A stretch of DNA of 64,000 nt, taken from assembly GCF_039654945.1 (NCBI RefSeq), contig NW_027361688.1, positions 12,896,001 through 12,960,000 on the forward strand. Reading direction: 5' to 3'. The stretch is from Dendrobates tinctorius (Eukaryota). The translations under genes were made by a program, and so were the position numbers. Of the stretch, positions 29,479 through 59,594 are shown piece after piece. Every line of letters begins with the position of its first letter. Positions within the stretch are counted from its first letter, which is position 1. The notes under the pieces are model-generated. The model was not told the origin of the DNA. It did no database searches and was given only the letters and a program-made list of their open reading frames with translations.

Positions 29479-29657
29479 ATGCCTTCCTGGGCTCCTGCCA
29501 TCGGTCTCACCGTTTTGCCCCATGTGGGTGGACTACTTGGAGGACTCATTACCCGTAAAGAGGTCAAAACGTGGTATACGACGCTGGCGAAACCGTCATG
29601 GCGCCCTCCTAATTGGATGTTTGCACCAGTGTGGACAACCCTGTATACGTCTATGGG
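29479..29657 (+). CDS. TSPO: Translocator protein TSPO (canonical copy 1), first coding exon
   Basis: MPSWAPAIGLTVLPHVGG...WYTTLAKPSWRPPNWMFAPVWTTLYTSMG; acceptor at 29473-74, GTAAGT donor. Confidence 0.97.
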
Positions 29658-29683
29658 GTAAGTACGATCCCAAAAAAAAATAG

Positions 29684-29951
29684 AAAAATATTCAGGATTG
29701 AGAGTCCTCAGTAGTTGATACCTTTTAATGGCTAACTGAAAAGATGGTAATACATTGCAAGCTTTCGAGACTACTCAGGTCTCTTCATCAGGCTAGCCTG
29801 ATGAAGAGACCTGAGTAGTCTCGAAAGCTTGCAATGTATTACCATCTTTTCAGTTAGCCATTAAAAGGTATCAACTACTGAGGACTCTCAATCCTGAATA
29901 TTTTTCTATCTACTGGCTAACACGGTACAAAGATATACATCTTTCCTGTAT
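29684..29951. mobile_element. Penelope-like non-autonomous insertion forming a perfect 230-bp palindrome with a hammerhead core
   Basis: Arms 29680-29794 / 29795-29909; CTGATGA-a-gagac(ctgagta)gtctc-GAAAGCTT at 29798-29830; 13-bp TSD caaaaaaaaatag. Confidence 0.8.
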
Positions 29952-30538
29952 CAAAAAAAAATAGTAATTCAATGAGGTTTACACCTTGTTTCTGCATCTC
30001 TGTTCATCCCTCATACTTTACACTGCAGTTCTAGATAATGAAAATGTTAATGCGACATTAATGCAGTTACCTAAATGGTTCATTCATTGAATAATAGAAA
30101 GTTGTAGAATTTTCTAAAATACATTTTTCTTCTACTCTTCAATATGAGCTGTCAGTGAACAAAAACACTCTTATAACATCCAGAGACTAAAATCCCACCA
30201 TGATAACGTCCAAGGGACAAAGCTTTTTACTATGCGATTCACCCTATCTTCATAGGAAAGATCCTTTATCAAAAGTTGATCAGTGATCAACACTGATCTG
30301 TACAGAAACCTAGCAATAAGTGTTTAGTTTTCCTGCAGCGCCACCACAGGGGAAATAAGGAATTACACAGTGCCTGTTTAAATCAATGGTTAATATAGGA
30401 CTGGAAGGGTCCTCCAGATTCTAAAAAGCTCTTTGCAACCAGGAGATTAGGATTCTACACATAGGACCCCCTCTGTTACTCAGAATCCCCCCAAATATGA
30501 ATTGGATAAATACCGTATATATTTTCTTTTTTTTTTAG

Positions 30539-30677
30539 TTATGGTTCATACCTGATCTATAAAGAGTTGGGTGGATTCACTGAAGACGCTGTGGTTCCTT
30601 TAGGACTGTATGGGGGACAGCTGGCTCTTAACTGGGCCTGGACCCCAATTTTCTTTGGAGCCCATAAAATTGGTTGG
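30539..30677 (+). CDS. TSPO: TSPO copy 1, second coding exon
   Basis: 139 nt, AG/GT; [46 protein letters not shown]. Confidence 0.97.
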
Positions 30678-30846
30678 GTAAGTGGTACTATATAAGCAGT
30701 GAATCATTATCCCTATGGGGGGCACCAGTATGTATTTACCAGGGTTTTCCCAAAGGCAATTCTTTGCCGATTAAAATATAGAAAGGGGGCACAGCTGTGT
30801 TTTGGTGGAGTCCCCCTTTACTTTTTTTTTTTTTTTTTTTTAACAG

Positions 30847-31017
30847 GGGTTTTTTGAAATCGTCCTTCTCACTGGTACAGTCGTACTTACAACCGCATCT
30901 TGGTATCCGATCAGTAAGACAGCGACCTACCTCATGTTCCCTTACATTGCCTGGCTGTCGTTGGCCTCTACCCTGAACTACGTCATTTGGAGGGACAACA
31001 AGGACAAATCTGAATGA
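30847..31017 (+). CDS. TSPO: TSPO copy 1, last coding exon (protein 162 aa)
   Basis: GFFEIVLLTG...PYIAWLSLASTLNYVIWRDNKDKSE* with intact CRAC LNYxxWR; AATAAA at 31201. Confidence 0.97.
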   Translation, partial: GFFEIVLLTGTVVLTTASWYPISKTATYLMFPYIAWLSLASTLNYVIWRDNKDKSE

Positions 31018-35469: not shown

Positions 35470-35651
35470 ATGGCGCCCCCCTGGCTTTCCGCTCTTGGGT
35501 TTACCGTTCTTCCATCAGCAGGGAGCGCCATTTCACGGATTGGAATCGAAGAGCAAATGAAAACCTGGTACCCAACACTGCGGAGACCAAGCTGGTGCCC
35601 CCCAAGCTGGGTGTTTCCACCGGTCTGGGTGACTTTGCATACATCAATGGG
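35470..35651 (+). CDS. TSPO-like paralog (copy 2), first coding exon
   Basis: ttcAG acceptor at 35454, Kozak ACCATGG, 182 nt, MAPPWLSALGFTVLPSAG...WYPTLRRPSWCPPSWVFPPVWVTLHTSMG, GTGAGT donor. Confidence 0.93.
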
Positions 35652-35749
35652 GTGAGTATGTTTAGAAACGGGTGTGAGATCTAGAGGTGTATGAAGAAAG
35701 ACATAAAGGGATCCTCCAGGGAAAAGTGGTACACTGTATAGAAACGTGT

Positions 35750-36090
35750 TATCTGTCATTGTACAGGAGGGGGAGGAGGTGAGCTGTGACATCACCTAAT
35801 GTGAATGGTGGATCCTGTGTTATCTACTGTATATAGAGATGTTATCAGTCATTGTACAGGAGGGGGAGGAGGTGAGCTGTGACATCACCTAATGTGAATG
35901 GTGGATCCTGTGTTATCTACTATATATAGAGCTGTTATCAGTCATTGAACAGGAGGAGGAGGTGAGCTGTGACATCACCTATTGTGAATGATGGATTCTA
36001 TGTCATCTACTGTATATAGAGCTGTTATCAGTCATTGTACAGGAGGAGGTGAGCTGTGACATCACCTATTGTGAATGGTGGATCCTATGT
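35750..36090. repeat. ~88-bp satellite, continued at 46691-46800 after the DIRS insertion
   Basis: Unit gatcctatgt|tatctactgt is split by the DIRS element. Confidence 0.9.
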
Positions 36091-38078
36091 TTTTACCCTT
36101 CGCCACGACAGCACCCACTGGAGGTATAGGATCCGCCCCACTTGGAACAAGAAACCCTACAGGAAGATAAAAAGGGGCGGTCCGGCTTTCCTCCTCAGTT
36201 TTGGTTTTCAGTTCCCAGGGAACCTCAGGATGATCCTTCAGGAAGACGTACCTGGGCCATAGGCACGCCGCCTGCGCAGTGTCCATGAGAATGGCAGGGG
36301 CTGCGGTCTGGAAGCAGCATCGGGGGAGACTCTGTTAGACAGCTCCCCCCTCGTCTGATGGCTAAAGGTGATGTCCGGGAAGGGCCACCCGGTCTCACCT
36401 AGGGGCGCGCCAGGCGGCACCAAGCATGCAGGAGCCACCGCTGTGGGAAGCGGTAAGTGCGCCAGTGGCGCGAAGGAAAAAAAAAAGAGAGGCAGCGGTG
36501 GCGGCAGCGTCGGGAGAAGCGCGGGCCGCATACAAAAGCGGCGGCGCGGTAGCCGGCCGGCGCAGATGCTCCTAGGCCCCAGAAGTAATGAGTCAACTTC
36601 CGGGGCATGATGGCTGAGGAGTGCAACGGCGCATGCGCGGTAAACCCGGGGAGGAGGAGCGACTTTCGGGAGAAGAAAAAAAAAAAAAGATCTATTTAAA
36701 CCAGCGCCGCAGCTTAGCAGCAGGATGCCATGTCATCCCCAGCGGAAGTACACGCTCCAGCAGGAGACTCTGCGGGGGGCAGCTCCTCCAGGGACCGCGC
36801 TACCAGGACAGACACCGCCCGCAGGAGCGAGGCGGGAGAGTCAAGACCTAGGACAGGATCTCAGCCATCTGATCCGGTAATAAAAAGCTTCACTGGGTGA
36901 GTGTGCAATATATATACTCTGCCTATTAAGCTGACCTCTACCTCCCCCCTTCTCCTTCGCCATGTCTCCCCTCTTCCAGGCGAAGAAAAAATCCAAACAA
37001 AAAGAATGCGCTTTATGCGCTGAGCCTCTCCCTGACTCCTACCCCAAAAAGCTCTGTAAGCAATGCACCAGAGAGCCTAGACAAGGGTCGGCAGTGTCTT
37101 CAAAGGACATTCGGGCCATAATTAGGGAGGAAATACAAGCTATCACCCGTGCCTGTACTCCCTCAGAAGCTAGGAGCAAAAAACAGGTGACCATCAGCTC
37201 AGAGTCAGAGGAAGAACAGGGGATAATCTCTGATTCTTCACTCGCATCGTCGTCCTCATCATCATCAGACATGGAGGGACGATCTTGTTTTCCCCTGGAT
37301 AGTGTGGATAACCTAGTCAAATCCATGAGGAACACTATGGGGTGTGAGGAGACAAGGGGCCCCCAAACCGCACAAGAAATAATGTTTGCGGGGTTGGCGG
37401 AAAAGAAAAGGAGAGCGTTTCCAGTAATACCGACAGTAAAGCCCTAATAAAGAGAGAGTGGGAAAAACACGATCAAAGAAGTTTTCTCCCATCGGCCTCC
37501 AAGAGGAAGTATCCATTTAGCGATGACGAGCTGTTAAAATGGACCAAAGTTCCAAAGGTTGATGCCGTTGCAGCCTCTACCTCGAAGCAGTCTACTATTC
37601 CGGTAGAGGACGCAGGCTTATTGGCGGACCCGCTAGACCGTAAAGCGGAGTCATCATTAAAAAGGTCTTGGGAGTCTACCACAGGGATTTTTAAGCCAGC
37701 AGTAGCCAGCACATGCACCGCCAGGTCTATGCTCATATGGTTGGACCAATTAGATCAACAAATCGAGCAGAAGGTGTCTAGGGGAAAACTACGGGCCGCT
37801 ATTCCATTAATTAAAGGGGCGGCAGCCTTCATGGCCGATGCATCGGCAGACACCCTACGGCTGGCAACGAGACCGGATGGTCTTGTACACAACGCCAGGC
37901 GGGCGCTATGGATGAAGAGCTGGAAGGGGGACGCGCAATCAAAATCTAAGATTTGCGCAACCCCGTGCGAGGGGGAGTTTCTCTTTGGGAAAGCCCTAGA
38001 TGACATACTTGCCAAAGCGAAAGAAAGGAAGAAGGCCTTCCCTGATCCTTCTATCCCTTTCTACAGGAGAACCTTTAA

Positions 38079-41000
38079 CCCCTTCACTACCAAGGGTGGT
38101 TTGCACATTAACTACCGGGCCAATTTTTACAATTCTGACCACTGTACCTTTATGAGGTCATAACTCTGGAACGCTTTCATGGATCCCGGTGATTCTGACA
38201 TTGTTTTCTCGTGACATATTGTACTTCATGTTAGTGGTAAAATTGCATTCAAATAACTTGCATTTATTTGTGAAAAAAACGGAAATTTGGCGAAAATTTT
38301 GAAAATTTCGCAATTTTCCAACTTTGAATTTTTATGCCCTTAAATCACAGCGATACGGCACACAAAAAACTTAATACATAACATTTCCCACATGTTTACT
38401 TTACATCAGCACAATTTTGGAACCAAAATTTTTTTTTGTTAGGAAGTTATAAGGGTTAAAAATTGACCAGCGATTTCTCATTTTTGCAACACCATTTTAT
38501 TTTTAGGGACCACTTCACATTTGAAGCCACTTTGAGGGGTCTATATGATAGAAAATACCCAAAAGTGACACCATTCTAAAAACTGCACCCCTTAAGGTGC
38601 TTAAAACCACATTCAAGAAGTTTATTAACCCTTTAGGTGCGTCACAGGAATTTTTTGAATATTAAAAAAAAAAATGAACATTTAACTTTTTTTCACAAAA
38701 AAAATACTTCAGGTTCAATTCTCTTTATTTTACCAAGGGTAACAGGAGAAATTGGACTGCAAAAGTTATTGTGCAATTTGTCCTGAGTACGCTGATACCT
38801 GATATGTGGGGGGGAACCACTGTTTCGGCGCATGGCAGAGCTCAGAATGGAAGGAGCGCTGTTTGACTTTTTCAATGCAAAATTGGCTGGAATTCAGATC
38901 GGACGCCATGTCACGTTTGGCGAGCCCCTGATGTACCTAAACAGTGGAAACCCCCCCAAGTGACCCCATTTTGGAAACTAGACCCCCCAAGGAACTTATC
39001 TAGATATGTGGTGAGAACTTTGAACCCACAAGGGCTTCACAGAAGTTTATAACGTACAGCAGTACAATTAAAAAATCATATTTTTTCCACAAAAATGATC
39101 TTTTCACCCTCAATTTTTATTTTTCCAAGGGTAACAGGACCCTAAAAGTTATTGTGCAATTTGTCCTGAGTACGCTGATACCCCATATGTGGGTGTAAAT
39201 GACTATTTGGGCGCATAGCAGAGCTCGGAAGGGAAGCAGCGCCATTTGACGTTTTTGGCTAGAATTGAGATCGGACACCATGTCGCGTTAGGAAAGCCCC
39301 TGATGTACCAAAACAGTAGAAACCCCCCACAAATGACACCATTTTGGAAACTAGACCCCCCAAGGAACTTATCTAGATGTGTGGTGAGCACTTTGAACCC
39401 CCCAGTGCTTCACTGAAGTTTATAACGTCCGGGCGTGAAAATAAAAAAATCGTATTTTTTCCACAAACATGATCTTTTAGTCCCCATTTTTTTATTTTCC
39501 CAAGGGTAACAGGAGAAATTGGACCCCAAAAGTTGTTGTCCAATTTGTCCTGAGTATGCTGATACCTCATATGTGGGAGAAAACTACTGTATGGGCACAC
39601 GTCGGGGCTCGGAAGGGAAGTAGTGACGTTTTGGAATGCAGACTTTGATGGAATGGTCTGCGGGTGTCATGTTGCGTTTGGAGAGCCCCTGATGTACCTA
39701 AACAGTGGAAACCCCCCACAAGTGACCCCATTTTGGAAACTAGACCCCCTACTGAACTTATCTAGATGTGTGGTGAGCACTTTGAACCCCCCAGTGCTTC
39801 ACAGAAGTTTATAACGCCTGGGCGTGAAAATAAAAAAAACATTTTTTTCCGCAAAATTATATTTTTGCCCCCAATTTTTTATTTTCCTAAGGGTAACAGG
39901 AGAAATTGGACCCCAAAAGTTGTTTTGTAATTTGTCCTGAGTAGGCTGATACCCTACATGTGGGGGTAAAACACTGTTTGGGCACATGGCAGAGCTTGGA
40001 AGGGAAGGAGCACCATTTGACTTTTTCAACGCAGAATTGGCTGGAATTGAGATCAGACGCCATGTTGCCTTTGGAGAGCACCTGATGTGCCCAAACAGTG
40101 GAAACCCCCAATTATAACTCCAACCCTAACCTCAACACACCCCTAACCNNNNNNNNNNNNNNNNNNNNNNNNNNNNNNNNNNNNNNNNNNNNNNNNNNNN
40201 NNNNNNNNNNNNNNNNNNNNNNNNNNNNNNNNNNNNNNNNNNNNNNNNNNNNNNNNNNNNNNNNNNNNNNNNNNNNNNNNNNNNNNNNNNNNNNNNNNNN
40301 NNNNNNNNNNNNNNNNNNNNNNAAATACATTTTCTTTTAGTTTTATTATTTTTCCCTAACTAAGGGGGTGATAACGGGGGGGTTTGATTTACGATTTATG
40401 GCGGTTTTTATGTTTGGCGGCTGTCGCACGCTAAAAGACGCTTTTTATTGTAAAAATAGTTTTTGCATCACCACATATTGTGAGCTATAATTTTTCCGTA
40501 TTTTGACCCACCGAGTCATGTGAGGTCTTATTTTTTGCGGGACGAGTTGACGTTTTTATTGGTACCATTTTCGGGCACGTGACATTTTTTGATTGCTTTT
40601 TATTCCGATTTTTGGGACGCAGAATGAACAAAAACCAGCGTTTCATGAATTTCTTTTGGGGGGTGCGTTTACACCGTTCCGCCTGCAGTAAAATTGATAA
40701 CGCGTTTTTATTCTTCGGGTCAGTACGGTTACAGCGATACCTCATTTAGGTCGTTTTTTTATGTTTTGTCGGTTTTTTGCAATGAAAACAATTTTATATA
40801 AAAAATAATTATTTTTGTATCGCTTTATTCTGCGAGCTATAACTTTTTTATTTTTTTGCGGATGATGCTGTATGGTGGCTCGTTTTTTGCGGGACAAGAT
40901 GACTTTTTCAGCGGTACCATGGATATTTATATGCGTCTTTTTGATCGCGCGTTATTGCACTTTTTGTTCGGTGGTATGATAATAAATCATTATTTTTTGC

Positions 41001-41764: not shown

Positions 41765-42051
41765 TTAAAAGGCGACCGTTTGAAAGAAGGAGACAAGCGG
41801 AGAGATCAAATAGATGGCCCACGAAGGAGGAAAAGCAAAAGGGTAGCATGTTTAGAGGTTCAACATTCCGAAAGGAAAATAAATACTAAAAAATGAGTCC
41901 TCCCGGTAAGGGGTAGATTAAAATTTTTTTCTTCAAAATGGGAACAAATAACTTCGAGTCCATGGATCCTAAATTTAATTAAAGAGGGAATAAAAATAGA
42001 ATTTCTTCAAATCCCTTATAATTTCTTTATCATAACCCGCCTTAACTCTAT

Positions 42052-47065: not shown

Positions 47066-47204
47066 ATACGGATCTTATTTGATTTGGAAAGAGTTGGGAG
47101 GATTTACTAAAGACGCAGTGGTGCCTCTTGGGGTATATGGCACGTACCTGGCTCTGAACTGGTCGTGGATTCGAGTTTTTTTGGGCGCCCACAAAATGAA
47201 ACTG
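47066..47204 (+). CDS. TSPO-like copy 2, second coding exon
   Basis: 139 nt, AG/GT; YGSYLIWKELGGFTKDAVVPLGVYGTYLALNWSWIRVFLGAHKMKL. Confidence 0.93.
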
Positions 47205-47219
47205 GTAATTTAGAATTAA

Positions 47220-48425
47220 CCCCTTAAACCCCCCCTTAGCTTTTTTCGGAATTGCATTTCCGTTTTTTTTGCTCTCCTCCTTCCCAGAGCCATATTTTTA
47301 ATTTTACCGTCACTGTGGCCATGTGAGGGTTTATTTTTTGCGGGACGAGTTGTACTTTTGAACGACGCCATTAGTTTTACCATGTCGTGTACTAGAAAAC
47401 AGGGGAAAAAAATTCCAAGTGCGGTGAAATTAAAAAAAAAAAAGTGCAATCCCACAATTGTTTTTTGTTTGGCTTTTTTGCTGGGTTTACTAAATGCTAA
47501 AACTGACCTGCCATTATGATTCTCCCGGTCATTACGAGTTCATAGACACCAAACATGTCTAGGTCCTTTTTTTTTATCTAAGTGGTGAAAAAAAATTCCA
47601 AACTTTGCTAAAAAAAAGAAAAAAATGGCGCAATTTTCTGAGACCTGTTGCGTCTCCATTTTTCGTGATCTCTGGTTGGTTGAGGGCTTATTTTTTGCGC
47701 ACCGAGCTGACGAATTTAGTGATACCATTTTGGTGTAGATACGATCTTTTGATCGCCCATTATTGCATTTTAATGCAGTGTTGCAGTGACCAAAAAAACA
47801 ATTCTGACGTTTTGATTTTTTTTCCCGCTACGCCGTTTAGCGATGAGGTTAATCCTTTTTTTTATTGACTGGCGATTCTGAACGCGGCGATACCAAATAT
47901 GTCTATGTTTGATTTTATTTTTATTGTTTTATTTTGAATGACTCAAAAGATTTTTAAACTTTTTTTTTTTTTTTTTTTACTTTTGCCATGCTTCAATAGT
48001 CTCCATAGGAGAATAGAAGCTGGCACAACTCGATCGGCTCAGCTACATAGAGGCAATAAGCAGACCACTGCGTGACCCTCACAGCAAGCCGACACTGACA
48101 ACCATAGAGGTCTCCAGGAGACCTCGGGTTGTCATGCCGACAAACCGATGTCCCGCGATCACGTGACGCAGGTCATTGGTGTGCGTACTTCCCGCACAAT
48201 TGCCGGAAGCGCCATTTAAATGCCGCTGTGAGCGTTTGACAGCGGCATTTAACTAGTTAATAGCCGCGGGTGGATCGCAATTCCACCCGCGGCTATTGCG
48301 GGCACATGTCAGCTGTTCAAAACAGCTGACATGTCCCGGGAAAGATGTGGGCTTACCGCCGGAGCCCACATCAAAGGGAGGGATACCGACATCGGCGTAC
48401 TATTACGCCCGATGACGGTAAGGGG
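47220..48425. mobile_element. piggyBac-type TTAA MITE
   Basis: TTAA|CCCCTT ... AAGGGG|TTAA; an empty site is visible at the paralogous position in copy 3 (~57659). Confidence 0.85.
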
Positions 48426-48444
48426 TTAAATTCTGAAATTTAGA

Positions 48445-49080
48445 GTACAGAGCATCGCAGCTATGATAGAAAGGAGTCGGGACACCCAGGTCATGACAGC
48501 TATCATAGAAAGGAGTCAGAACGCGCAGAGCATCGCAACTATGATAGAAAGGAGTCTTGACACGCAGAGCATCGCAGCTATGATAGAAAGGAGTCAGGAC
48601 ACGCAGAGCATCACAGCTATGATAGAAAAGAGTCAGGACACGCAGAGCATCGCAGCTATGATAGAAAGGAGTCTTGACACGCAGAGCATCACAGCTATGA
48701 TAAAAAGGATTCAGGACACGCAGAGCATCACAGCTATGATAGAAAAGAGTCAGGACACGCAGAGCATCGCAGCTATGATAGAAAGGAGTCTTGACACGCA
48801 GAGCATCACAGCTATGATAAAAAGGATTCAGGACACGCAGAGCATCACAGCTATGATAGAAAAGAGTCAGGACACGCAGAGCATCGCAGCTATGATAGAA
48901 AGGAGTCAGGACACGCAGAGCATTGCAGCTATGATAGAAAGGAGTCAGGACATGCAGAGCATTGCAGCTATGATAGAAAGGAGTCTTGACACGCAGAGCA
49001 TCGCGGCTATGATAAAAAGGAGTCAGGACACGCAGGGCATCGCAGCTATGAAAGGAGTCAGAACATTCAGGGCATCACAA
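48445..49080. repeat. 39-bp minisatellite (gagcatcgcagctatgatagaaaggagtcaggacacgca)
   Basis: Tandem units; explains ORF 48463..49221. Confidence 0.95.
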
Positions 49081-49267
49081 CATGCTGTGCATCTACAGTC
49101 TGTTGATAGTGCATTGTTGAGCTTTCGGAAACATTTATTGTTTGAACTACTTATGCGGCTTTTGTTCAGTATGCTATGGACAAATCTTAAATACTGGCAA
49201 TGTCACGGTCACTTTCAATAGTGTGTCAATAGTGATGTGCTTATATATTGTATAATTTTTATTACAG

Positions 49268-49444
49268 GCGTTTTTCCAAAGTGTTCTGATGACCGGATCC
49301 GCAGCCGCTACGGTTGTCGTCTGGTTCCCCATTAATAGAACAGCCGCCTGCCTGATGTCCCCCACTGTTGCTTGGTTGTCACTGGCCACTGCCTGGAGCT
49401 ATTGGTTTTGGAGGAACAACCTAGACAAGGAAAAACAGAAGTGA
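49268..49444 (+). CDS. TSPO-like copy 2, last coding exon (protein 165 aa)
   Basis: tacAG acceptor; AFFQSVLMTGSAAATVVVWFPINRTAACLMSPTVAWLSLATAWSYWFWRNNLDKEKQK*; AATAAA at 49717. Confidence 0.93.
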   Translation, partial: AFFQSVLMTGSAAATVVVWFPINRTAACLMSPTVAWLSLATAWSYWFWRNNLDKEKQK

Positions 49445-50830: not shown

Positions 50831-53800
50831 GAGAGCAGCAAAGAACAAACATTCAATTTTTCAATTTTAGAATTAATAAAGAAAAGATATAGTGCTTTCA
50901 GAAATCAAAAAGGTGAAATAAGAAAGAAATATACACACATGGCCCAACAGTACTAGACTAAAAAGGAGAAATCCAAAAGCTGATTTAGATCAGTGATACA
51001 TTTTCTGCGGCAAGGACAATGTCGAAATTAGGACAGATCTACAATTCTCGTTATTTCTTCTGGGTGTGACACTGAGTGTCTATGGATGAGATCTTTTAAA
51101 GGGTCCCATCCAGACCCCTCATCCTGGTCAGGTGAAAGGAGGATGGCTAATGCGGCACACACAGTCAAGTTCAGTGCGCATGTGCAAACACACTGGTAAG
51201 CATTCGCTCTAGGAGTGAGCGCTGGCTATCACAAACTAGGGCCGTCCTCGAGATGTTAGTTGAGGGGGTGTAACTGTGCATCCTGCTCATGGTCACGTCA
51301 TGGGTGCACCGTAGCTCCTCCGTTACCTATGGATTAAAAGTTCTTTTCACAATCACTGGTCCAGTATTATGCATAGTGCTTGTATAATTTTTATAAGGGA
51401 AAAGTCCCCTATATCATGGTATGGTTAGTCTGAAAGGCATTTTGTGAGTGACAGACTTCCTTTAAGATTGTTCAGCAGTTTCATGCAGCGCCTTCCAAAT
51501 AACCCTAACGTTATGTATTCTGTATGACAATTTTAGCCACCGCTATTGTATTAAAGGGAATCCGTCATCAGGTTTTTGCCACCTAATCTGAGAGCAGTAT
51601 AATGTAGGGACAGAGATGCTGATTCCACATATGTGTCACTTACTGGGCTGCTTGCTGTTGTTTTGATGAAATCACTGTCTTATCAGCAGGAGATTATCAG
51701 TAGCGGACCAGTAAATCGGCTGTAGGTAGTCCAGCCACGCCCCCATCACTGATAGGCAGCTTTCTGTGTACATGGGTAGAACACTGCCAATCAGTGGTGT
51801 GGGCGGGGTTATGCAGAGCTCAGCATTTAGAGAACTGTTAAATCTGCTGCAGAGAAAACTGTGATTTTATCAAAATGACAACACCGCAGCTCAGTAAGTG
51901 ATACATCGCTGGAATCAGGCTCTCTACCCTTACATTATGCTGCAAAACATGCCTTACTTTTGTACTTCACTATATATATTTATGGTAACTTGTTCACAAA
52001 ATTGTGCGATCTAAGACTTAGGTGTATAGTAGTTGTTTTTATTTATTGTATTTTTTTTAGATGCCTAGACACCAATGGAACTTTTGGTTTTGGACATATA
52101 AAAATGATTCTGCCCTAATAGTGCCAGTCTATTATCTACAATATGGCTTGGGGCGCTTATATTATAGAGATTAAGGTAATTTGATCAAGTTGTTCTGCAA
52201 TCTGGTGACCTCTATCACAAACTTTGCAAGGGCAGACTGCACGCCGAACCTCCGCACGCTGCCCACAAACGTTGCCTGCTAGTGTATACGGGTGAATATG
52301 CTTTTCTTATAATTATCTTGATTATGTGGCTAAAATGGACCTGCTGGATAACTAGTGCTGAACCCCTGAGGAAGCCACCTTCCTGGCGATACGCGTAGGG
52401 ATATCGCATGCCCCCTAATCCTCCTTGGCTTTTATTGCAGTGTTCTTTTCGCTCATATTTATGATTATTTCTATATTTATAGCTATATTTGATTTGGTTT
52501 ATTATCTGGGACCTTTATATTTTGCATAGATTTTCTTAGCGCTTGTTGTATTTTTTATGCCAGTGGGTTTTCTATCTTATATGATGAGTTAGGGGGTATT
52601 TTTTTTGACCCCCCCCCCAATACTTATGTCGTTTTGAAAGTTGAAATACTTAGTTTTAGGCAGTTATGCTCTTTTTAAATGTTTTTGTTGTTGTTGTTTT
52701 TTTTTTTTTGCCAAATGGATTATTTGTACTGATAGTTTGAGTTAATCAGCAAGTTTTTATTATGTAATCTGACAGCATCATGATGTAGGGGCAGAGACCC
52801 TGATTCCGGCAATGTGTCCCTTTACTGGGCTGCTTGCTGTAGTTTTGATAACATCCATGATTTCACTGCTGTGGATGTAGCAGTCTTCAGAATACTGAGC
52901 CCAGTATAACCCCGCCCACACCACCGATTGGCCGCTTCCTGTGTACACTGTGAACAAGCTGCCAATCAGTGGGGGGGGCGTGGTTGGACTAGGTGGTACA
53001 AAATACCTAGTCCTGCAGTGATAATCTGCTGATAAAACACTGATTGTATTGAAACTAACTTGACTAAGTGACACATCCCTGGAATCAGGTGGAATCAGGC
53101 TCTCTGCCCCTACGCTATGCTGCTGTTAAATAGCCAAAACCCACAGACAGATTCCCTTTTTTCTGCCATTAATGCAGGAAAAGCACCGACTATTATCTCA
53201 CGTACATGGTTCTTATCGAGTTCAAGTTCAGCAAAAACAAGTTTAATGTTGGACTTTAGTCTCCCTCTATTCGTTCCCTAACATCTGATCCTGGCCTCCC
53301 CGCTATACAGTCTGCAGAGGCGTATCGGCGAGGTAATAACGAGCACCTCGCCCACGGGTCCCGCGGATAGGGGCCACATAGAGAGACATTATTACTGGAT
53401 GGGGAACATTGTTAGTAGATGGGGGGCCACAATATTAAAGATATACTGATTGAAGTTTAGGTTGTGAGCCCCGATGGGGACAGAGATGATGAAGTCTGTA
53501 AAGTGCTGCGGAATATGATGGCGCTATATAAGCAAGAAAAAAAATAAGAGAAGGACATTATGACTGTATGGGGGGCACAAAGAGGAATTTTACAATTGTA
53601 CGGGGGCCACAAAAGGGAACCTAAATTAATAATGTATGGGGGCCACAAGGGAGGACACTTATACAGGGAGAAAGGCACAAATAGGGACATCACCACTGCA
53701 ATATATGTCATTTTTGGGCAGAATATAACTAATAATTCCGCCATATAGTGCAGAAGCTGTGTACCGCACACCGTACAGCGCGACGCGGATGATTGGACGC

Positions 53801-54016
53801 ACCCTGGTTATGCAACTGCTTAGCGAGAAGTTATATAAGACGAGTTCTACTGCGCCACCTGGTGGCCACAAAATGTAAAACACAGGGATGGACATTTCAT
53901 AATCAAGTCAATGAAGGAATTGCCATCTATGCCATTTCCTATACACACTCCTGTTCACAAGTCTTTAGTTCATGAATTCATGTTTTTATTTTTGATGTTC
54001 AGGATTGTTGTCAACC

Positions 54017-54198
54017 ATGATGCCCCCCTGGCTTCCAGCTGTTGGGTTCACCATCCTCCCATCAGTAGGGAGCGCCATTGGACAGATTGGAACAGGCGAG
54101 CAAATGAACACCTGGTTTGTGACACTGCGGAAACCAAGATGGGCCCCTCCAAACTGGGTGTTCCCACCGGTATGGGCAACATTAAATACGTCAGTGGG
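54017..54198 (+). CDS. TSPO-like paralog (copy 3), first coding exon
   Basis: Acceptor at 54001-02, ACCATG, 182 nt, MMPPWLPAVGFTILPSVG...WFVTLRKPRWAPPNWVFPPVWATLNTSVG, GTGAGT donor. Confidence 0.93.
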
Positions 54199-54266
54199 GT
54201 GAGTGCGTTGTGAAACTGGAGTGGGATCCACAAATATACGAACAAAGACTTAAAGGGACACTGTGT

Positions 54267-55690
54267 GATTGTACAGGAGGAGGAGGAGGTGAGCTGTGAC
54301 ATCACCTACTGTGAATGGTGGATCCTATGTTATCTACTGTATATAGAGGGGTTATCAGTCATTGTATAGGAGGAGGAGGTGAGCTGTGATATCACCTGTT
54401 GTGAATAGTGGATCCTATGTTATCTACTGTATATAGAGGTGTTATCAGTCATTGTATAGGAGGAGGAGGAGGAGGTGAGCTGTGACATCACCTATTGTGA
54501 ATGGTGGATCCTGTGTTGTCTACTGTATATAGAGGTGTTATCAGTCATTGTACAGGAGGAGGAGGAGGAGGTGAGCTGTGACATCACCTATTGTGAATGG
54601 TGAATCCTGTGTTATCTACTGTATATAGAGGTGTTATCAGTCATTGTACAGGAGGAGGAGGTGAGCTGTGACATCACCTATTGTGAATGGTGAATCCTGT
54701 GTTATCTACTGTATATAGAGGTGTTATCAGTCATTGTATAGGAGGAGGAGGAGGTGAGCTGTGATATCACCTGTTGTGAATAGTGGATCCTGTGTTATCT
54801 ACTGTATATAGAGGGGTTATTAGTCATTGAACAGGAGGAGGAGGTGAGCTGTGACATCACCTATTGTGAATGGTGGATCCTGTGTTGGCTACTGTATATA
54901 GAGGTGTTATCAGTCATTGTACAGGAGGAGGAGGAGGTGAGCTGTGACATCACCTATTGTGAATGGTGAATCCTGTGTTATCTACTGTATATAGAGGTGT
55001 TATCAGTCATTGTATAGGAGGAGGAGGAGGAGGTGAGCTGTGACATCACCTATTGTGAATGGTGGATCCTGTGTTATCTACTGTATATAGAGGGGTTATC
55101 AGTCATTGTACAGGAGGAGGTGAGCTGTGACATCACCTATTGTGATTTGGTGGATCCTATGTTATCTACTGTATATAGAGGTGTTATCAGTCATTGTATA
55201 GGAGGAGGTGAGCTGTGACATCACCTACTGTGAATGGTGGATCCTGTGTTATCTACTGCATATAGAGGTGTTATCAGTCATTGTATAGGAGGAGGAGGTG
55301 AGCTGTGACATCACCTATTGTGAATGGTGAATCCTGTGTTATATACTGTATACTGAGGTATTATCAGTCATTGTACAGGAGGAGGAGGTGAGCTGTGACA
55401 TCACCTATTGTGAATGTTGGATCCTATGTTATCTACTGTATATAGAGGTGTTATCAGTCATTGCACAGGAGGGGGAGGAGGTGAGCTGTGACATCACCTA
55501 TTGTGAATGGTGGATCCTGTGTTATCTACTGTATATAGAGGTGTTATCAGTCATTGTACAGGAGGGGGAGGAGGTGAGCTGTGACATCACCTATTGTGAA
55601 TGGTGGATCCTGTGCTATCTACTGTATATAGAGGTGTTATCAGTCATTGTACAGGAGGGGGAGGAGGTGAGCTGTGACATCACCTATTGT
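54267..55690. repeat. ~88-bp satellite array
   Basis: About 16 units, in the same position relative to the exon as in copy 2. Confidence 0.95.
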
Positions 55691-56094
55691 GCTTTATATA
55701 CTCTATATATAGTTGTAGTCAAAAGTTTTGAGACTGACACAAATTTAGGTTTTTACACTTTGCTGCTTCAGTGTTTTTAGATCTTTAGTCGGATGTTTCT
55801 ACAGTTACTGGGGTACAATTATAAACATTTCAGGCTTTTTTTAAACTTTTATTCACAAATACATTAACGTTTATGGAAAAACTCAATAGTTACATCGTCA
55901 ACCATTTTTTTTTCAGAGTTCGGCTCTTTGCCCCGGCAGCTGGGTATCGGCTTCTGGGGCAAATCCTGACTGATGACCGCCCGTTCTTGTCTCATCAGTG
56001 CTTGGAGGTTTTAACAATTTGTGTTACTTTGTCGTTTTTTGAGAATCAACCACAAGTTCTCTATGGGATTGAGATCTGGGCAGCCTTCTGGTCG

Positions 56095-57205
56095 TTTTAA
56101 TGAAAGACTACACTACACACAGTGTTTAAAGCTTTATTATACTCCTAATCCCATATCGAAGCCATCGTTCTCCTGTAAAAAATTATAAAACAATAAACCA
56201 ACAATATACATACGTGTCCGGCGATCAGTCACGTCCCACGGCGTAATCCATCTCAGGGGTTAATCAGTTTACAGCCGGAGCGCTGCTGATGCGACCGCTC
56301 CAACTGTAAACTACAGGGGAATGAAGGTGAAGCAGCGCGCACAGGCTCAGTGACGTCACCGCTAGTTACAGAGCATGCACCGGCTGCTTCTATTCATTCC
56401 CCAGTAGTTTACAGTCGGAGCGGTTGCATTAGCAGCGCTGCGGCTGTAAACTGATTAACCCCCGACATGGATTTACACCGTGGGACGTGACTGAGCGCCG
56501 GACAGGTATGGATATTGTTGGTTTATTATTTTATAATTTTTTACAGGAGAACGATGGCTTCGATATGGAATTAGGAGTATAATAAAGCTTTAAATACTGT
56601 GTGTAGTGTAGTCTTTCATTAAAATACTTCGTTCTTATTGTGTGTATGTATTCATTTAACCCGTGAATAATTCTAGACTTAGTAATGGAGAGGTGTCTTA
56701 TTGACACCTCTCCATTACTAATCTGGGCTTATACAATAGAAAGGTGACATTAACCCCTTATTAACCCCACTTGCCACCGCTACAGGGCAAGTGGGAAGAA
56801 CCCTATAAAGCCCCCCAGAATAGGCGCATCTAATAGATGCACCTTTTCTGGGAAGCTGTGGGCTGCTGTTTTTAGGCTGTGGGGAGCCAAGATCAATGAG
56901 AATAGCAGCCCCCAGTTGTGATTTTTGCTGGGTTGGTTCACAAACAGAAGGGGACCCCACGTTGGGTTTTCATTCATTCTTTCTCTCCTGCTCGCTGTTG
57001 CCGGCAGAGCAGGAGAGAAGAATGACAGCCGCGTTCAGCACCAGCCGCCGGGGAACAGCGCTTAATGTAGCGCTTCTTCCCCAGCGGCCGTCCGTGTGGT
57101 CCTGATGCGGCACACGGTTGCCACACGGATGTACCACGTATCCACATGGACAGCTCCGGTACCGTTTTTTCCGGTACCGGAATTATCTGGACTTGTGAGA
57201 CTGCC
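56095..57205. mobile_element. Non-autonomous element with a ~230-bp inverted duplication (56095-56325 / 56393-56624)
   Basis: Arms are reverse complements; related to 25200-26620. Confidence 0.6.
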
Positions 57206-57506
57206 CTTACAACCTCCAGGCTGCTCTAATAATTCAGTCACTATGACAGAGTGATATCAGCTGCCTTGTCCTTGTTAACCCTTTCTTCTGTGCTAATGAG
57301 AAAATCACTGAAATGGTGTCAGCAGGTCATTTTGTGGCGAGGAACGTTAATAAATAGAAAAAAGTGGAAAACCCTTTTAAGGCCTACAAAACAAATCAGA
57401 CAATATAAATTTTCTGCCCGTATTATTTTTTTTAAGACCGAAGGCTTTTTATAAATTTTTCTCTTTTAATATTCTACTTGTATTGATTAATTTTTATCTT
57501 TTTCAG

Positions 57507-57645
57507 ATACAGCTCTTATTTGATTTGGAAAGAGTTGGGAGGATTTACTAAAGACGCCGTAGTGCCTCTTGGGGTATATTCCACGTACCTAGCGTTGACC
57601 TGGTCATGGAGTCAAGTTTTTTTTGGTGCCCATAAAATTAAGCTG
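57507..57645 (+). CDS. TSPO-like copy 3, second coding exon
   Basis: 139 nt, AG/GT; YSSYLIWKELGGFTKDAVVPLGVYSTYLALTWSWSQVFFGAHKIKL. Confidence 0.93.
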
Positions 57646-57749
57646 GTAATTCTCTAAATTAATGTCTGAAATTCAGAGCACAGTTGGCGTCCAGTCACTA
57701 GGACAGACCCTTTCAGTAAGAACAGGAATTACACGACTCAACGATCACA

Positions 57750-59240
57750 TGGTGCTATGATATACAGGAATCCGGACACGCAGAGCATCACAGCTATGAT
57801 AGAAAGGAGTCAGGGCGCACACAGCATCACAGCTATGATAGTAAGGAGTCATTACACGCAGAGCATTGCAGGTGTAATAGAAAGGAGCCAGCACATGCAA
57901 AGCATCGCAGCTATGATAGAAAGGAGTCAGGACACGCAGAGCATCACAGCTATGATAGAAAGGAGTCAGGGCGCACACAGCATCGCAGCTATGATAGAAA
58001 GGAGTCAGGACACAGAGCATCACAGCTATGATAGAAAGGAGTCAGAACACACAGTGCACCACAGCTATGATAGAAAGGATTCAGGATACCCAGGGAATCA
58101 CAGCGATGAGAGAAAAGAGTCAGGACACCTAGGACATCACAGTTATGGGAGAAAGGAGTCAGGACACGCTGAGCATCGCAGCTATGATAGAAAGCAGTCA
58201 GGTTCTACTTGCTGGAGCGTATTCATGTTTTTTGGTAATTATATCATACATATGTCTGTGTCATGCAGGATCAGGTTTATGTACCACTTGTTATAAGCAC
58301 GGGACCTTGGATGATGTGTTCTTGTCATTGCAGTTTTTAATAGTGTTTTATTATGCATGTGTCTTTTTGTGGTCTGTTATTTGAATAAAATTATTGTTAT
58401 ATATTTTTCTCATATCAAGGTGTGTGCTATTCTTATACATTGGTCTTTCCCCTTGTTTTTGTTCATGCTATTTGCACAATGCATTACACAGCACCCTATT
58501 AGCTAATATTACCTTATTGGTAGTGCACATATTACATTTACTGTTTAGAAAGGAGTCAGGACACGCTGAGCATCACAGCTATGATAGAAAAAAGTCAGGA
58601 CACGCTGAGCATCACAGCTATGATAGAAAAGAGTCAGGACACGCAGAGCATTGCAGCTATGATAGAAAGGAGTCAGGACACGCTGAGCATCACAGCTATG
58701 ATAGAAAGGAGTCAGGACACGCAGAGCATCACAGCTATCAGAAAGGAGTCAGGACACGCAGAGCATTGCAGCTATGATAGAAAGGAGTCAGGACACGCTG
58801 AGCATCACAGCTATGATAGAAAGGAGTCAGGACACACAGAGCATTGCAGCTATGATAGAAAGGAGTCAGGACACGCTGAGCATCACAGCTATGATAGAAA
58901 GGAGTCAGGACACGCTGAGCATCGCAGCTATGATAGAAAGGAGTCAGGACACGCTGAGCATCGCAGCTATGATAGAAAGGAGTCAGGACACGCTGAGCAT
59001 CACAGCTATGATAGAAAGGAGTCAGGACACGCTGAGCATCGCAGCTATGATAGAAAGGAGTCAGGACACGCAGAGCATTGCAGCTATGATAGAAAGGAGT
59101 CAGGACACGCTGAGCATTGCAGCTATGATAGAAAGGAGTCAGGACACGCTGAGCATCACAGCTACGATAGAAAGGAGTCAGGACACGCTGAGCATCACAG
59201 CTATCATAGAAAAGAGTCAGGACACGCAGAGCATTGCAGC
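57750..59240. repeat. 39-bp minisatellite in two blocks (57750-58200, 58545-59240)
   Basis: Same unit as 48445-49080. Confidence 0.93.
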
Positions 59241-59423
59241 ATGCTGTGTATCTACAGACTGTTCTTAATGCATTGTGAAGCTTTAGGTGAAATTTATAGT
59301 TTGTCCCACATATGAGTACAAGTCCCAAACACTTTCAAATTGCTGGTTGTAATGTCAGGATTTCCTCAATAGTTTGTGTATGCCATTTTGCGCATCTATA
59401 ATTTTACTGGTTTTTTTCTACAG

Positions 59424-59594
59424 GCATTTTTCCAATCTGTTCTTACGACCGGAATCGCAGCTGCTACAGTTGTCATCTGGTGCCCCATTAACAGAACGGC
59501 CGCCTACCTGATGGCCCCCACTGTTCCTTGGATGATAATAGAAACTGTCTGGAGCTATCGGTATTGGAAGGACAACCTAGACAAGACAAAATAG
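59424..59594 (+). CDS. TSPO-like copy 3, last coding exon (protein 163 aa)
   Basis: ctacAG acceptor; AFFQSVLTTGIAAATVVIWCPINRTAAYLMAPTVPWMIIETVWSYRYWKDNLDKTK*; AATAAA at 59803 and 59887. Confidence 0.93.
   Translation, partial: AFFQSVLTTGIAAATVVIWCPINRTAAYLMAPTVPWMIIETVWSYRYWKDNLDKTK

What the first reader, a model, noticed from the sequence alone, without database searches (positions are those of the whole stretch)
29479..59594. Tandem array of three intact TSPO genes: one canonical plus two strongly diverged paralogs
Seen: three complete 3-coding-exon genes on the + strand (179/139/171, 182/139/177 and 182/139/171 nt). All have GT-AG sites, matching phases, no stops and their own AATAAA. 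By hand count, copy 1 vs 2 is ~56% identical (91/162 aa) and copy 2 vs 3 ~74% (120/163). Known: human has a single TSPO between MCAT and TTLL12, and the paralog TSPO2 lies at a different locus, so these are local duplicates. TSPO is an outer-mitochondrial 5-TM protein binding cholesterol, porphyrins and small aromatic ligands. Inference: two paralogs have stayed open despite >10 kb of intronic TE insertion, which suggests a lineage-specific neofunctionalised small-molecule-binding family (pigment/porphyrin, steroid or xenobiotic/alkaloid handling are candidates).
Basis: partly seen in the sequence, partly recalled or inferred. Interest (0 to 1): 0.88.

Follow-up and report, generated by a model that had tools for sequence, protein, structure and literature searches.

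The report
Frog TSPO plus two TSPO-like genes
A poison frog carries its normal TSPO gene followed by two intact, fast-evolving "TSPO-like" copies; the extra gene type is old and shared with other frogs, it was duplicated again in poison frogs, and what it does is unknown.

Summary
Three intact three-coding-exon TSPO genes lie in tandem on the + strand between MCAT and TTLL12. Exon sizes, splice sites and hand-counted identities (91/162, 120/163) all reproduce. The assembly gap sits inside intron 1 of copy 2, next to a ~385-bp tandem array, and touches no coding sequence. Continuity across it was not tested.

The window is Dendrobates tinctorius. Copies 2 and 3 are already NCBI models named "translocator protein-like". 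They are not species-specific. With genes from Nanorana, Engystomops, Anomaloglossus, Phyllobates and Ranitomeya they form a clade (100/100) outside TSPO2. In Nanorana the gene sits in the same TSPO–TSPOL–TTLL12 order, so the first duplication predates the ranoid–hyloid split. All four dendrobatoid genera carry two TSPO-like genes.

Outside dendrobatoids TSPOL is as constrained as TSPO (ω≈0.05–0.06). On the copy 2 and 3 branches ω is 0.5–0.8 and ω=1 is not rejected. Cavity positions are altered (W107L, A50P, G23Q/R, A147E, L150W).

Copy 3 is transcribed and spliced exactly as predicted in four runs. Copy 2 expression was not tested.

An alkaloid- or pigment-handling role remains speculation. 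I class this as a new member of a known family, of moderate interest.

The parts
29479..31017 (+). c1: canonical TSPO (TSPO1 orthologue). Coding exons 29479-29657, 30539-30677 and 30847-31017; 162 aa.
   Evidence: Gene model. Pfam 181.8 bits. 99% identical to Ranitomeya imitator TSPO and inside the anuran TSPO1 clade. ω 0.04-0.05 against Engystomops TSPO.
35470..49444 (+). c2: TSPO-like gene, A147/W150 type. Coding exons 35470-35651, 47066-47204 and 49268-49444; 165 aa. Identical to NCBI XP_073423807 'translocator protein-like isoform X1'.
   Evidence: 18 residues are unique among TSPOL proteins. Branch ω 0.55-0.61. Expression was not tested here.
46650..46675 (+). Alternative first coding exon of c2 (MDSLKEHY..). 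It is used by NCBI isoform X2 (113 aa), which lacks the residues encoded by coding exon 1.
   Evidence: The peptide of P0006 was located in the window. A GT donor follows it.
40149..40322 (.). Assembly gap (N) inside c2 intron 1, directly after a ~385-bp tandem array at 38673-40110.
   Evidence: Not filled and not looked up.
42130..46109 (.). Retroelement ORFs inside c2 intron 1: RVT_1 on the - strand at 42130-43473, and RVT_1 plus RNase H on the + strand at 43806-44765.
   Evidence: Pfam.
52262..52291 (+). 3' end of the non-coding 5' exon of c3. It is spliced to the acceptor just before 54003.
   Evidence: Loose 5' letters of RNA contigs in four runs match the window exactly at 52262-52290, followed by G|GTGAAT.
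54003..59910 (+). c3: TSPO-like gene, E147/W150 type. Coding exons 54017-54198, 57507-57645 and 59424-59594; 163 aa. Identical to NCBI XP_073423813. The mRNA ends at about 59905-59910, after AATAAA at 59887.
   Evidence: Spliced contigs join 54197/8 to 57506/7 and 57644/5 to 59423/4, GT..AG, in 4 runs from 2 studies. AlphaFold2 model pLDDT 91.7 with a TSPO fold.
35733..36091 (+). ~90-nt satellite at the start of c2 intron 1. The same family occurs at the start of c3 intron 1 (54268-55691) and downstream of c1 (31974-32338).
48448..49051 (+). 39-nt minisatellite in c2 intron 2. The same family occurs in c3 intron 2 (57754-58202 and 58546-59234).
   Evidence: The segment 58607-59641 aligns to 48450-49485 at 82.5% over 1052 nt.
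9027..12075 (-). MCAT exons (upstream flanking gene).
   Evidence: ORFs. Acyl_transf_1 domain.
62308..62511 (-). Last coding exon of TTLL12 (downstream flanking gene).
   Evidence: Called gene with SET_TTL and TTL domains 2.7 kb after c3. ORF.

Best explanation
The window is the MCAT-TTLL12 interval of Dendrobates tinctorius. It holds the canonical TSPO gene (c1) and two members (c2, c3) of a frog-specific third vertebrate TSPO lineage, called TSPOL here.

Origin and history:
- TSPOL arose by tandem duplication of TSPO at this locus before the ranoid-hyloid split.
- In Nanorana and Engystomops it stayed single-copy and as strongly constrained as TSPO itself.
- In Dendrobatoidea it is present in two copies. 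In D. tinctorius the duplication carried the introns with it.
- From then on the copies changed protein sequence much faster, mostly in the first and last coding exons.

The proteins:
- c2 and c3 keep the five-helix TSPO fold, the invariant Trp/Pro/Gly core and a CRAC-like cholesterol motif.
- They carry replacements at positions that line the drug/porphyrin cavity of mammalian TSPO: W107L, A50P and P97Q in all TSPOL; G23Q/R, L150W and A147E in dendrobatoid copies.

Inferred, not shown: they are membrane proteins, probably of the outer mitochondrial membrane. They probably still bind sterol but have altered cavity-ligand specificity. In this they would parallel amniote TSPO2, which is reported to keep the cholesterol-binding site and not to share PK11195 binding (PMC6470738).

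The two D. tinctorius copies are under relaxed, exon-dependent constraint and are not dead. c3 is shown to be transcribed and correctly spliced. c2 is intact but its expression is unverified.
For: - Identity and structure: three intact genes, PF03073; c3 model pLDDT 91.7, five TM helices; the only PDB matches with E-value below 0.001 are TSPO chains, TM-score 0.81-0.88 to RsTSPO and BcTSPO.
- Species and annotation: c3 equals XP_073423813 and c2 equals XP_073423807 of D. tinctorius.
- Clade: TSPOL is monophyletic at 100/100 with a stem of 0.42. Its internal order follows the species tree (Nanorana, Engystomops, Anomaloglossus, Dendrobatidae). It is excluded from the TSPO2 clade, which has 100/97 support.
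- Synteny: Nanorana has TSPO, TSPOL, then TTLL12 on the - strand. Engystomops has TSPO 3.2 kb from TSPOL. Ranitomeya variabilis has three TspO genes in tandem.
- Constraint: Nanorana TSPOL against Engystomops TSPOL gives ω≈0.04. In the 6-taxon codon model, canonical ω is 0.05 and TSPOL background ω is 0.063 (equal, p=0.57). c2 is 0.55 and c3 is 0.84. Setting c2 and c3 equal to the background is rejected at p=2e-11.
- Residual constraint on c2 and c3: pN 0.147 is below pS 0.271 (p=0.003). Exon 2 gives p=0.0014. All 21 family-invariant columns are kept. The chance of an ORF surviving under neutrality is 0.036 for c2 and 0.018 for c3.
- Segmental duplication: c2 and c3 share colinear intron homology and the same two intronic repeat families.
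- Expression: contigs of 4 runs from 2 studies carry both c3 junctions and a 5' UTR exon, with no mismatches in the exons.
- Cavity residues: the list is taken from PMC6470738 and mapped onto the frog proteins. Positions conserved elsewhere but changed in TSPOL are listed.
Against: - ω=1 cannot be rejected on the c2 or c3 branch, singly or jointly, by my codon model (p=0.28-0.70 singly, joint p=0.29).
- In the last exon pN equals pS.
- Unique substitutions in c2 and c3 do not significantly avoid conserved positions.
- No read evidence was obtained for c2, whose exon 1 is separated from exons 2-3 by an assembly gap.
- The position of TSPOL relative to TSPO1 is unresolved. The AU test gives p=0.43 for a sister relation to anuran TSPO1, p=0.057 for nesting within neobatrachian TSPO1 and p=0.063 for grouping with TSPO2. 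The date of origin therefore rests on Nanorana synteny.
- TSPOL was not found among the annotated proteins of Rana, Bufo, Hyla, Pseudophryne or Pyxicephalus. That means either repeated loss or missed annotation, and I could not search those genomes.
- Localisation and ligand binding are pure inference.
Confidence: 0.8

Rival explanations
1. c2, c3 or both are redundant duplicates drifting towards pseudogenisation. The fast protein change would then be plain loss of constraint with no new function.
For: - Branch ω is 0.55-0.84 and not different from 1.
- Exon 3 has pN equal to pS.
- Unique changes hit conserved and variable sites alike.
- c2 has an 11.4-kb intron full of retroelements and a gap.
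- Phyllobates carries two nearly identical copies, which suggests turnover or gene conversion in the array.
Against: - Both ORFs, start codons, stops and all splice sites are intact. The neutral survival probability is 0.036 and 0.018 before indels are even counted.
- Exon 2 is still constrained (ω 0.22, p=0.0014).
- All invariant family residues are kept.
- c3 mRNA is spliced and polyadenylated in four runs.
- Two TSPOL copies are retained in four dendrobatoid genera.
Confidence: 0.15
2. The dendrobatoid TSPOL copies were adaptively remodelled into binders or carriers of lipophilic small molecules specific to poison frogs (dietary alkaloids, pigments or porphyrins). Cavity changes such as A147E would supply a new binding chemistry.
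For: - The rate shift is specific to the dendrobatid lineage (background equality rejected at p=2e-11). There is also an apparent excess of non-synonymous change on the stem leading to c2 and c3 (stem equal to background rejected at p=0.003, though the estimate is unstable).
- Changes fall at cavity positions 23, 147 and 150.
- One E147 copy and one A147 copy coexist in Anomaloglossus, Ranitomeya variabilis and D. tinctorius.
Against: - ω does not exceed 1 on either the c2 or the c3 branch.
- TSPOL and its W107L, A50P and P97Q changes predate poison frogs.
- The E147 and A147 pair is also present in Anomaloglossus, an aromobatid that I recall as not sequestering alkaloids (my own knowledge, not checked).
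- There are no tissue data and no binding data.
- No paper in the searched library links TSPO to sequestration.
Confidence: 0.07
3. c2 and c3 are the frog orthologues of TSPO2, relocated next to TSPO.
For: - They share W107L and loss of other PK11195 contacts with TSPO2 (PMC6470738).
- The AU test does not formally reject a TSPOL plus TSPO2 clade (p=0.063).
Against: - The TSPO2 clade (Latimeria, Pogona, Sphaerodactylus, an Ambystoma 'TSPO-like') has 100/97 support without TSPOL.
- Forcing the union costs 19.7 lnL units.
- TSPOL sits in tandem with TSPO between MCAT and TTLL12 in three frog families.
Confidence: 0.03

Closest known systems
TSPO / TSPO1 (18-kDa translocator protein, PF03073; mouse structure 2MGY)
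   Same: - c1 is the orthologue.
- c2 and c3 share the three-coding-exon structure, plus a non-coding 5' exon shown for c3.
- They share the five-TM fold and the invariant W53, W95 and W143.
- They keep a CRAC-like L/V-x-Y-x-R/K motif at the end of TM5.
- They are 43-50% identical to rodent TSPO with no gaps over residues 3-160.
   Different: - c2 and c3 are only 54-56% identical to c1, whereas c1 is 88% identical to Rana TSPO.
- They lose residues that are conserved at 90% or more in other vertebrate TSPOs: P97, L84, Y140, Q88, Y57 and in part Y34.
- They change PK11195-contact positions 23, 50, 107, 147 and 150.
TSPO2 (amniote erythroid paralogue)
   Same: It is also a second vertebrate TSPO paralogue. 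W107 and other PK11195 contacts are not conserved in it, while the cholesterol-binding site is conserved (PMC6470738). It is the best functional analogy.
   Different: It is a separate clade. TSPOL is a tandem copy at the TSPO locus and was found only in neobatrachian frogs.
NCBI 'translocator protein-like' models of other frogs (Nanorana parkeri XP_018408963, Engystomops XP_072006677, Phyllobates XP_073506124/6, Ranitomeya XP_077122691/3, Anomaloglossus XP_075198274/6)
   Same: They belong to the same TSPOL clade, have the same exon sizes where DNA was available, and have the same locus where it could be seen.
   Different: - The D. tinctorius pair is the most diverged within a species (74%, against 90% or more in the other three genera).
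- The E147 copy is the third gene in the D. tinctorius array but the second in Ranitomeya variabilis.

Membership tests
TspO/MBR family (PF03073) | Full-length match to the family HMM above the curated threshold | tested here: met
   c1 scores 181.8 bits, c2 139.4 and c3 132.7, against a cut-off of 24. All cover profile positions 1-2 to 144-145 of 145.
TspO/MBR family (PF03073) | Five-transmembrane-helix TSPO fold | tested here: met
   The c3 AlphaFold2 model has pLDDT 91.7 and pTM 0.85. It has helices at 5-24, 46-70, 76-101, 105-126 and 131-157. The only PDB matches with E-value below 0.001 are TSPO chains, with TM-score 0.81-0.88 to 4UC1, 8E7X and 4RYI and 0.64 to 2MGY. c2 was not modelled.
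TspO/MBR family (PF03073) | Conserved core residues (W33, W53, W93, W95, W143, P40, P44, G61, etc.) | tested here: met
   All 21 columns that are invariant in a 40-sequence alignment, from invertebrates to mammals, include c2 and c3. W53, W95 and W143 are kept in all TSPOL proteins.
TspO/MBR family (PF03073) | CRAC cholesterol motif L/V-X(1-5)-Y-X(1-5)-R/K at the C-terminal end of TM5 | tested here: met
   Read directly from the sequences. c1 has L-N-Y-VIW-R, c2 has L-ATAWS-Y-WFW-R and c3 has V-WS-Y-RYW-K. Only the pattern was tested. Binding was not.
TspO/MBR family (PF03073) | Outer-mitochondrial-membrane location and binding of cholesterol, porphyrin or PK11195 | not testable with these tools
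   This needs localisation and binding assays.
TSPO1 orthologue (c1 only) | Falls inside the anuran TSPO1 clade and lies between MCAT and TTLL12 | tested here: met
   c1 is 99% identical to Ranitomeya imitator TSPO and sits in the anuran clade with 98/84 support.
TSPO1 orthologue (c2, c3) | Falls inside the anuran TSPO1 clade | tested here: not met
   c2 and c3 form a separate 100/100 clade on a 0.42 stem. A sister relation to anuran TSPO1 is allowed (AU p=0.43). Nesting within neobatrachian TSPO1 is borderline (p=0.057).
TSPO2 | Groups with TSPO2 of Latimeria and reptiles in a tree | tested here: not met
   The TSPO2 clade has 100/97 support and excludes TSPOL. The forced union is 19.7 lnL units worse, with AU p=0.063, so it is not formally rejected.
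TSPO2 | Lies at its own locus away from TSPO | tested here: not met
   c2 and c3 lie in tandem with TSPO. The same holds in Nanorana and Ranitomeya.
Expressed functional gene (as opposed to a pseudogene) | Correctly spliced transcript | tested here: met
   Met for c3 only. Both junctions and a 5' UTR exon appear in contigs of 4 runs from 2 studies.
Expressed functional gene (as opposed to a pseudogene) | dN/dS significantly below 1 on its own branch | tested here: inconclusive
   The codon model gives c2 0.55-0.61 and c3 0.73-0.84, and ω=1 is not rejected. The NG86 count test between c2 and c3 gives p=0.003 overall, p=0.0014 for exon 2 and p=1 for exon 3.

The most novel reading that the evidence does not exclude
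In dendrobatoid frogs the duplicated TSPOL genes may have been selected for a new ligand chemistry. One copy per species keeps Ala147 and the other carries a buried Glu147 (with Trp150) in the TSPO cavity. The Glu could act as a counter-charge for protonated lipophilic amines. That would make these proteins intracellular binders or buffers for dietary alkaloids, or for another cationic lipophile, and so a membrane-protein counterpart of the plasma alkaloid-binding serpin.
Probability: 0.07. Interest if true: 0.8.

Novelty: new member of a known kind. Interest (0 to 1): 0.4.

Why it matters
Vertebrate TSPO biology is normally framed as TSPO1 plus TSPO2. These data point to a third lineage, frog-specific and tandemly arranged. 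It has been conserved for a very long time, with ω≈0.05 between a ranoid and a hyloid. No paper in the searchable library describes it.

It offers natural variants at the residues that matter for TSPO pharmacology. Position 147 is the site of the human A147T polymorphism that affects PET ligand binding, here changed to Glu. W107, L150 and the W-x-P-x-F segment are also changed.

In poison frogs the lineage was duplicated and released from constraint. That makes it a reasonable but unproven candidate in searches for small-molecule-handling genes. It is also a clean case for studying what happens to a highly constrained membrane protein after duplication.

This is not a new kind of system, and the genes are already in NCBI's annotation.

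Tried and rejected
- **TSPO2 orthology.** Rejected on the tree and on synteny. The AU test was only borderline.
- **Species-specific duplication.** Rejected by homologues in six other frog species and by the Nanorana locus.
- **Retrocopy origin.** Rejected because all copies keep the introns, and c2 and c3 share intron sequence.
- **Hidden extra TSPO exons.** None were found in the window, including c2 intron 1.
- **Transcript contigs through the protein index.** Looking up c2 and c3 with the look-up of encoding contigs returned only the NCBI genome record. This says nothing about expression, because one search shows Logan contigs that carry the full c3 coding sequence yet are absent from that index.
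- **DNA of other dendrobatoid loci.** DNA of the Phyllobates, Ranitomeya and Anomaloglossus loci could not be fetched ('file too large'). Codon analyses therefore use only D. tinctorius, Engystomops and Nanorana.
- **First 6-taxon codon-model run.** It timed out and was rerun with a faster implementation.
- **Dendrobatid-stem ω.** The estimate hit the upper bound. I treat it only as 'excess non-synonymous change', not as a number.
- **Avoidance of conserved positions.** The test of whether substitutions unique to c2 or c3 avoid conserved positions was not significant.
- **Literature.** Searches for TSPO in poison frogs or amphibian TSPO paralogues found nothing relevant.

Full report
**1. The observation**

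The window has two N runs. One, at 40149-40322, falls inside the finding.

| Copy | Coding exons | Sizes (nt) | Protein |
|---|---|---|---|
| c1 | 29479-29657, 30539-30677, 30847-31017 | 179/139/171 | 162 aa |
| c2 | 35470-35651, 47066-47204, 49268-49444 | 182/139/177 | 165 aa |
| c3 | 54017-54198, 57507-57645, 59424-59594 | 182/139/171 | 163 aa |

- All introns are GT..AG, the phases agree and there are no internal stops.
- A poly(A) signal follows each stop.
- The hand-counted identities are exact: 91/162 for c1/c2 and 120/163 for c2/c3.
- All three match Pfam TspO_MBR end to end at 133-182 bits.
- c2 aligns without gaps to mouse TSPO (2MGY) over residues 3-160.

The gap lies in c2 intron 1, far from any exon, directly after a ~385-bp tandem array at 38673-40110. 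It cannot disturb the frame. MCAT lies upstream on the - strand. The last TTLL12 exon lies 2.7 kb downstream of c3 on the - strand.

**2. Where the window comes from and whether the genes are already annotated**

c3 is identical to Dendrobates tinctorius XP_073423813. c2 is identical to XP_073423807. Both are named 'translocator protein-like'. A second annotated c2 isoform (113 aa) starts from an alternative exon at 46650 inside intron 1. The gene models are therefore not new. No paper in the searchable library mentions TSPO paralogues in poison frogs or amphibians.

**3. Relatives**

The closest proteins to c2 and c3 are 'translocator protein-like' models from these species:
- Phyllobates terribilis (two genes differing by one residue)
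- Ranitomeya variabilis (two genes) and R. imitator
- Anomaloglossus baeobatrachus (two genes, each also present on an unplaced contig)
- Engystomops pustulosus
- Nanorana parkeri, a ranoid

The maximum-likelihood tree of 50 vertebrate TSPO proteins shows the following:
- These proteins form one clade with 100/100 support on a long stem (0.42).
- The branching inside the clade follows the species tree: Nanorana, Engystomops, Anomaloglossus, then Dendrobatidae.
- c1 sits inside the anuran TSPO1 clade, 99% identical to R. imitator TSPO.
- The TSPO2 clade (100/97) excludes c2 and c3.

The deep position of the clade is unresolved (AU tests):

| Constraint | p-AU | lnL cost |
|---|---|---|
| One clade with anuran TSPO1 | 0.43 | 0.4 |
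| Nested within neobatrachian TSPO1 | 0.057 | 9.9 |
| One clade with TSPO2 | 0.063 | 19.7 |

Synteny settles the origin better than the tree does:
- In Nanorana the order is TSPO (+), TSPOL (+), TTLL12 (-), as in this window.
- In Engystomops TSPO lies 3.2 kb from TSPOL. In that assembly it is in the opposite orientation and carries frameshifts, probably assembly errors, because an intact copy of its exons 1-2 sits on a small contig.
- In R. variabilis three TspO genes stand in tandem.

TSPOL is therefore an old tandem duplicate of TSPO, at least as old as the ranoid-hyloid split. No TSPOL appeared among the annotated proteins of Rana, Bufo, Hyla, Pseudophryne, Pyxicephalus or Mantella, whose TSPO1 proteins are in the database. 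That means either repeated loss or missed annotation, and I could not search those genomes.

**4. The second duplication**

- c2 and c3 share colinear non-coding sequence. It comprises about 165 nt upstream of the ATG, the start of intron 1 with a ~90-nt satellite, the flanks of exon 2, and about 1 kb of intron 2 with a 39-nt minisatellite running into the 3' UTR. Identity is 77-84%. The whole gene with its introns was therefore duplicated.
- In the tree c3 groups with the Ranitomeya genes (100/99). c2 sits in an unresolved trichotomy with Phyllobates and that group.
- Within-species pairs are 90% or more identical in Anomaloglossus, Phyllobates and Ranitomeya, but only 74% identical in D. tinctorius.
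- Anomaloglossus, R. variabilis and D. tinctorius each have one copy with Glu147 and one with Ala147. However, the Glu copy is second in the Ranitomeya array and third in this one.
- One old duplication with later gene conversion and repeated parallel change are both open.

**5. Selection**

Pairwise values:

| Pair | dN/dS |
|---|---|
| c1 vs Engystomops TSPO | 0.04 |
| Nanorana TSPOL vs Engystomops TSPOL | ≈0.04 (dS saturated) |
| c2 vs Engystomops TSPOL | 0.17 |
| c3 vs Engystomops TSPOL | 0.21 |
| c2 vs c3 | 0.49 (NG86) to 0.65 (ML) |

I wrote a GY94-type branch model and ran it on six sequences. A five-sequence version agreed.

| Branch class | ω |
|---|---|
| Canonical TSPO | 0.05 |
| TSPOL background | 0.063 |
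| c2 | 0.55 |
| c3 | 0.84 |

- The TSPOL background does not differ from canonical TSPO (p=0.57).
- Setting c2 and c3 equal to the TSPOL background is rejected (p=2e-11).
- ω=1 is not rejected for c2, for c3 or for both together (p=0.28, 0.70, 0.29).
- The branch leading to c2 and c3 shows an excess of non-synonymous change (equality with the background rejected at p=0.003). Its ω estimate ran to the bound and should not be quoted as a number.

Three lines of evidence argue against pure neutrality:
- A count-based test gives pN 0.147 below pS 0.271 (p=0.003). This comes from exon 2 (p=0.0014) and partly exon 1 (p=0.054). In exon 3 pN equals pS.
- All 21 family-invariant residues are kept.
- Simulated neutral substitution at the estimated branch lengths leaves the ORF intact in only 3.6% of runs for c2 and 1.8% for c3, before indels and splice sites are counted.

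Substitutions unique to c2 (18) or c3 (11) do not significantly avoid conserved positions. My reading is strongly relaxed, exon-dependent constraint. Positive selection at some sites is possible but not shown.

**6. Expression**

I searched for runs using the last exon and 3' UTR of c3. I then laid four runs from two studies of the same organism on 53950-59920.
- Every run has contigs that join 54197/8 to 57506/7 and 57644/5 to 59423/4 (GT..AG), with no mismatches in the exons.
- Two contigs (819 and 888 nt) span all three coding exons.
- They run to about 59905-59910, just after the AATAAA at 59887.
- They begin with letters that match 52262-52290, which is a non-coding 5' exon spliced to the acceptor 14 nt before the ATG.
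- c3 is thus a four-exon gene.
- The run labels are coded, so tissue is unknown.
- Twelve runs of a second organism hold about 19% of the sampled words. This is consistent with an expressed orthologue in a relative, but I did not examine it.

**7. What the proteins look like**

- The AlphaFold2 model of c3 (pLDDT 91.7) has five long helices. Among solved structures it matches only TSPO.
- A CRAC-like motif is present in all three proteins (read).
- I took the PK11195 contacts from PMC6470738: A23, V26, L49, A50, I52, W107, A110, L114, A147 and L150, plus R46, W53, W95, D111 and W143.
- All TSPOL proteins have W107L and A50P.
- Dendrobatoid copies add G23Q/R and L150W, and half of them add A147E.
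- W53, W95 and W143 are unchanged.
- Of 61 positions that are at least 90% conserved in other vertebrate TSPO1 and TSPO2, TSPOL keeps 54 and changes P97, L84, Y140, Q88, Y57, Y34 and G22.
- According to that paper, TSPO2 also lacks W107 and other PK11195 contacts while its cholesterol-binding site is conserved. TSPO2 is therefore the closest functional analogy, though not the closest relative.

**8. Verdict**

These are local duplicates with remodelled cavities, and at least c3 is a live gene. The paralogue type, however, is ancient and widespread in neobatrachian frogs. The extra duplication is dendrobatoid-wide, not peculiar to this species. The fast divergence fits relaxed constraint at least as well as neofunctionalisation. 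A link to alkaloids, pigments or steroids has no direct support. This is a new, automatically annotated but undescribed member lineage of a well-known family, and I rate it as moderately interesting.

Noticed in passing
window 32825-34663: A large 31-nt tandem array of about 60 copies (91% matches) lies between c1 and c2. It gives long spurious ORFs in three frames.
   Followed up: no
window 31974-32338, 35733-36091, 46690-46798, 54268-55691: One ~90-nt satellite family occurs downstream of c1, at the start of intron 1 of both c2 and c3, and next to the alternative c2 exon. RNA-run contigs cover the c3 copy at very high word depth (up to about 1600). The family is therefore abundant or transcribed elsewhere in the genome.
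   Followed up: partly
window 38673-40110: A ~385-bp tandem array of at least 4 units ends at the assembly gap. The sequence after the gap is not part of the array, so the gap probably marks a collapsed or unresolved repeat.
   Followed up: partly
window 37621-38163 (+) and 18102-18680 (-): Two transposon-associated ORFs match Pfam LAP2alpha (E-values 2e-10 and 3e-4). One is in c2 intron 1 and the other lies between MCAT and c1. Near the second are ORFs resembling those of the c2-intron retroelement, and a Ty3-type gag at 21431-22321. A LAP2alpha-like domain in a frog retroelement is unusual.
   Followed up: no
window 23700-24900: A GC-rich island (up to 72% GC against a 45% window mean) lies about 5 kb upstream of the c1 start codon. 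It may be the CpG-island promoter and non-coding first exon of canonical TSPO.
   Followed up: no
window 46650-46675: The annotated alternative first exon of c2 would give a 113-aa protein lacking the residues encoded by coding exon 1 (TM1 and most of TM2). Whether that transcript is real or functional is unknown.
   Followed up: partly
L001 4628-6763 (Engystomops pustulosus GCA_019512145.1): In this assembly the canonical TSPO next to TSPOL lies on the opposite strand. Its exons 1-2 carry frameshifts, while an intact copy of those exons sits on a 4.4-kb unplaced contig (L002). This is probably an assembly artefact and not a pseudogene.
   Followed up: partly
Proteins P0001 and P0149 (Phyllobates terribilis): The two TSPO-like genes of Phyllobates differ by a single residue (A/S at position 147). 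That points to very recent duplication, gene conversion or a haplotype duplication in the assembly.
   Followed up: no
Proteins P0074 (Xenopus tropicalis) and P0098 (Rhinophrynus dorsalis): Further 'translocator protein-like' models exist in pipoid frogs. They fall inside the anuran TSPO1 clade and not in TSPOL, so they are independent, younger TSPO duplicates.
   Followed up: partly
Runs X5-X16 (organism B): Twelve RNA runs from six studies of a second organism hold about 19% of the sampled words of the c3 last exon and 3' UTR. This would fit an expressed c3 orthologue in a related frog.
   Followed up: no
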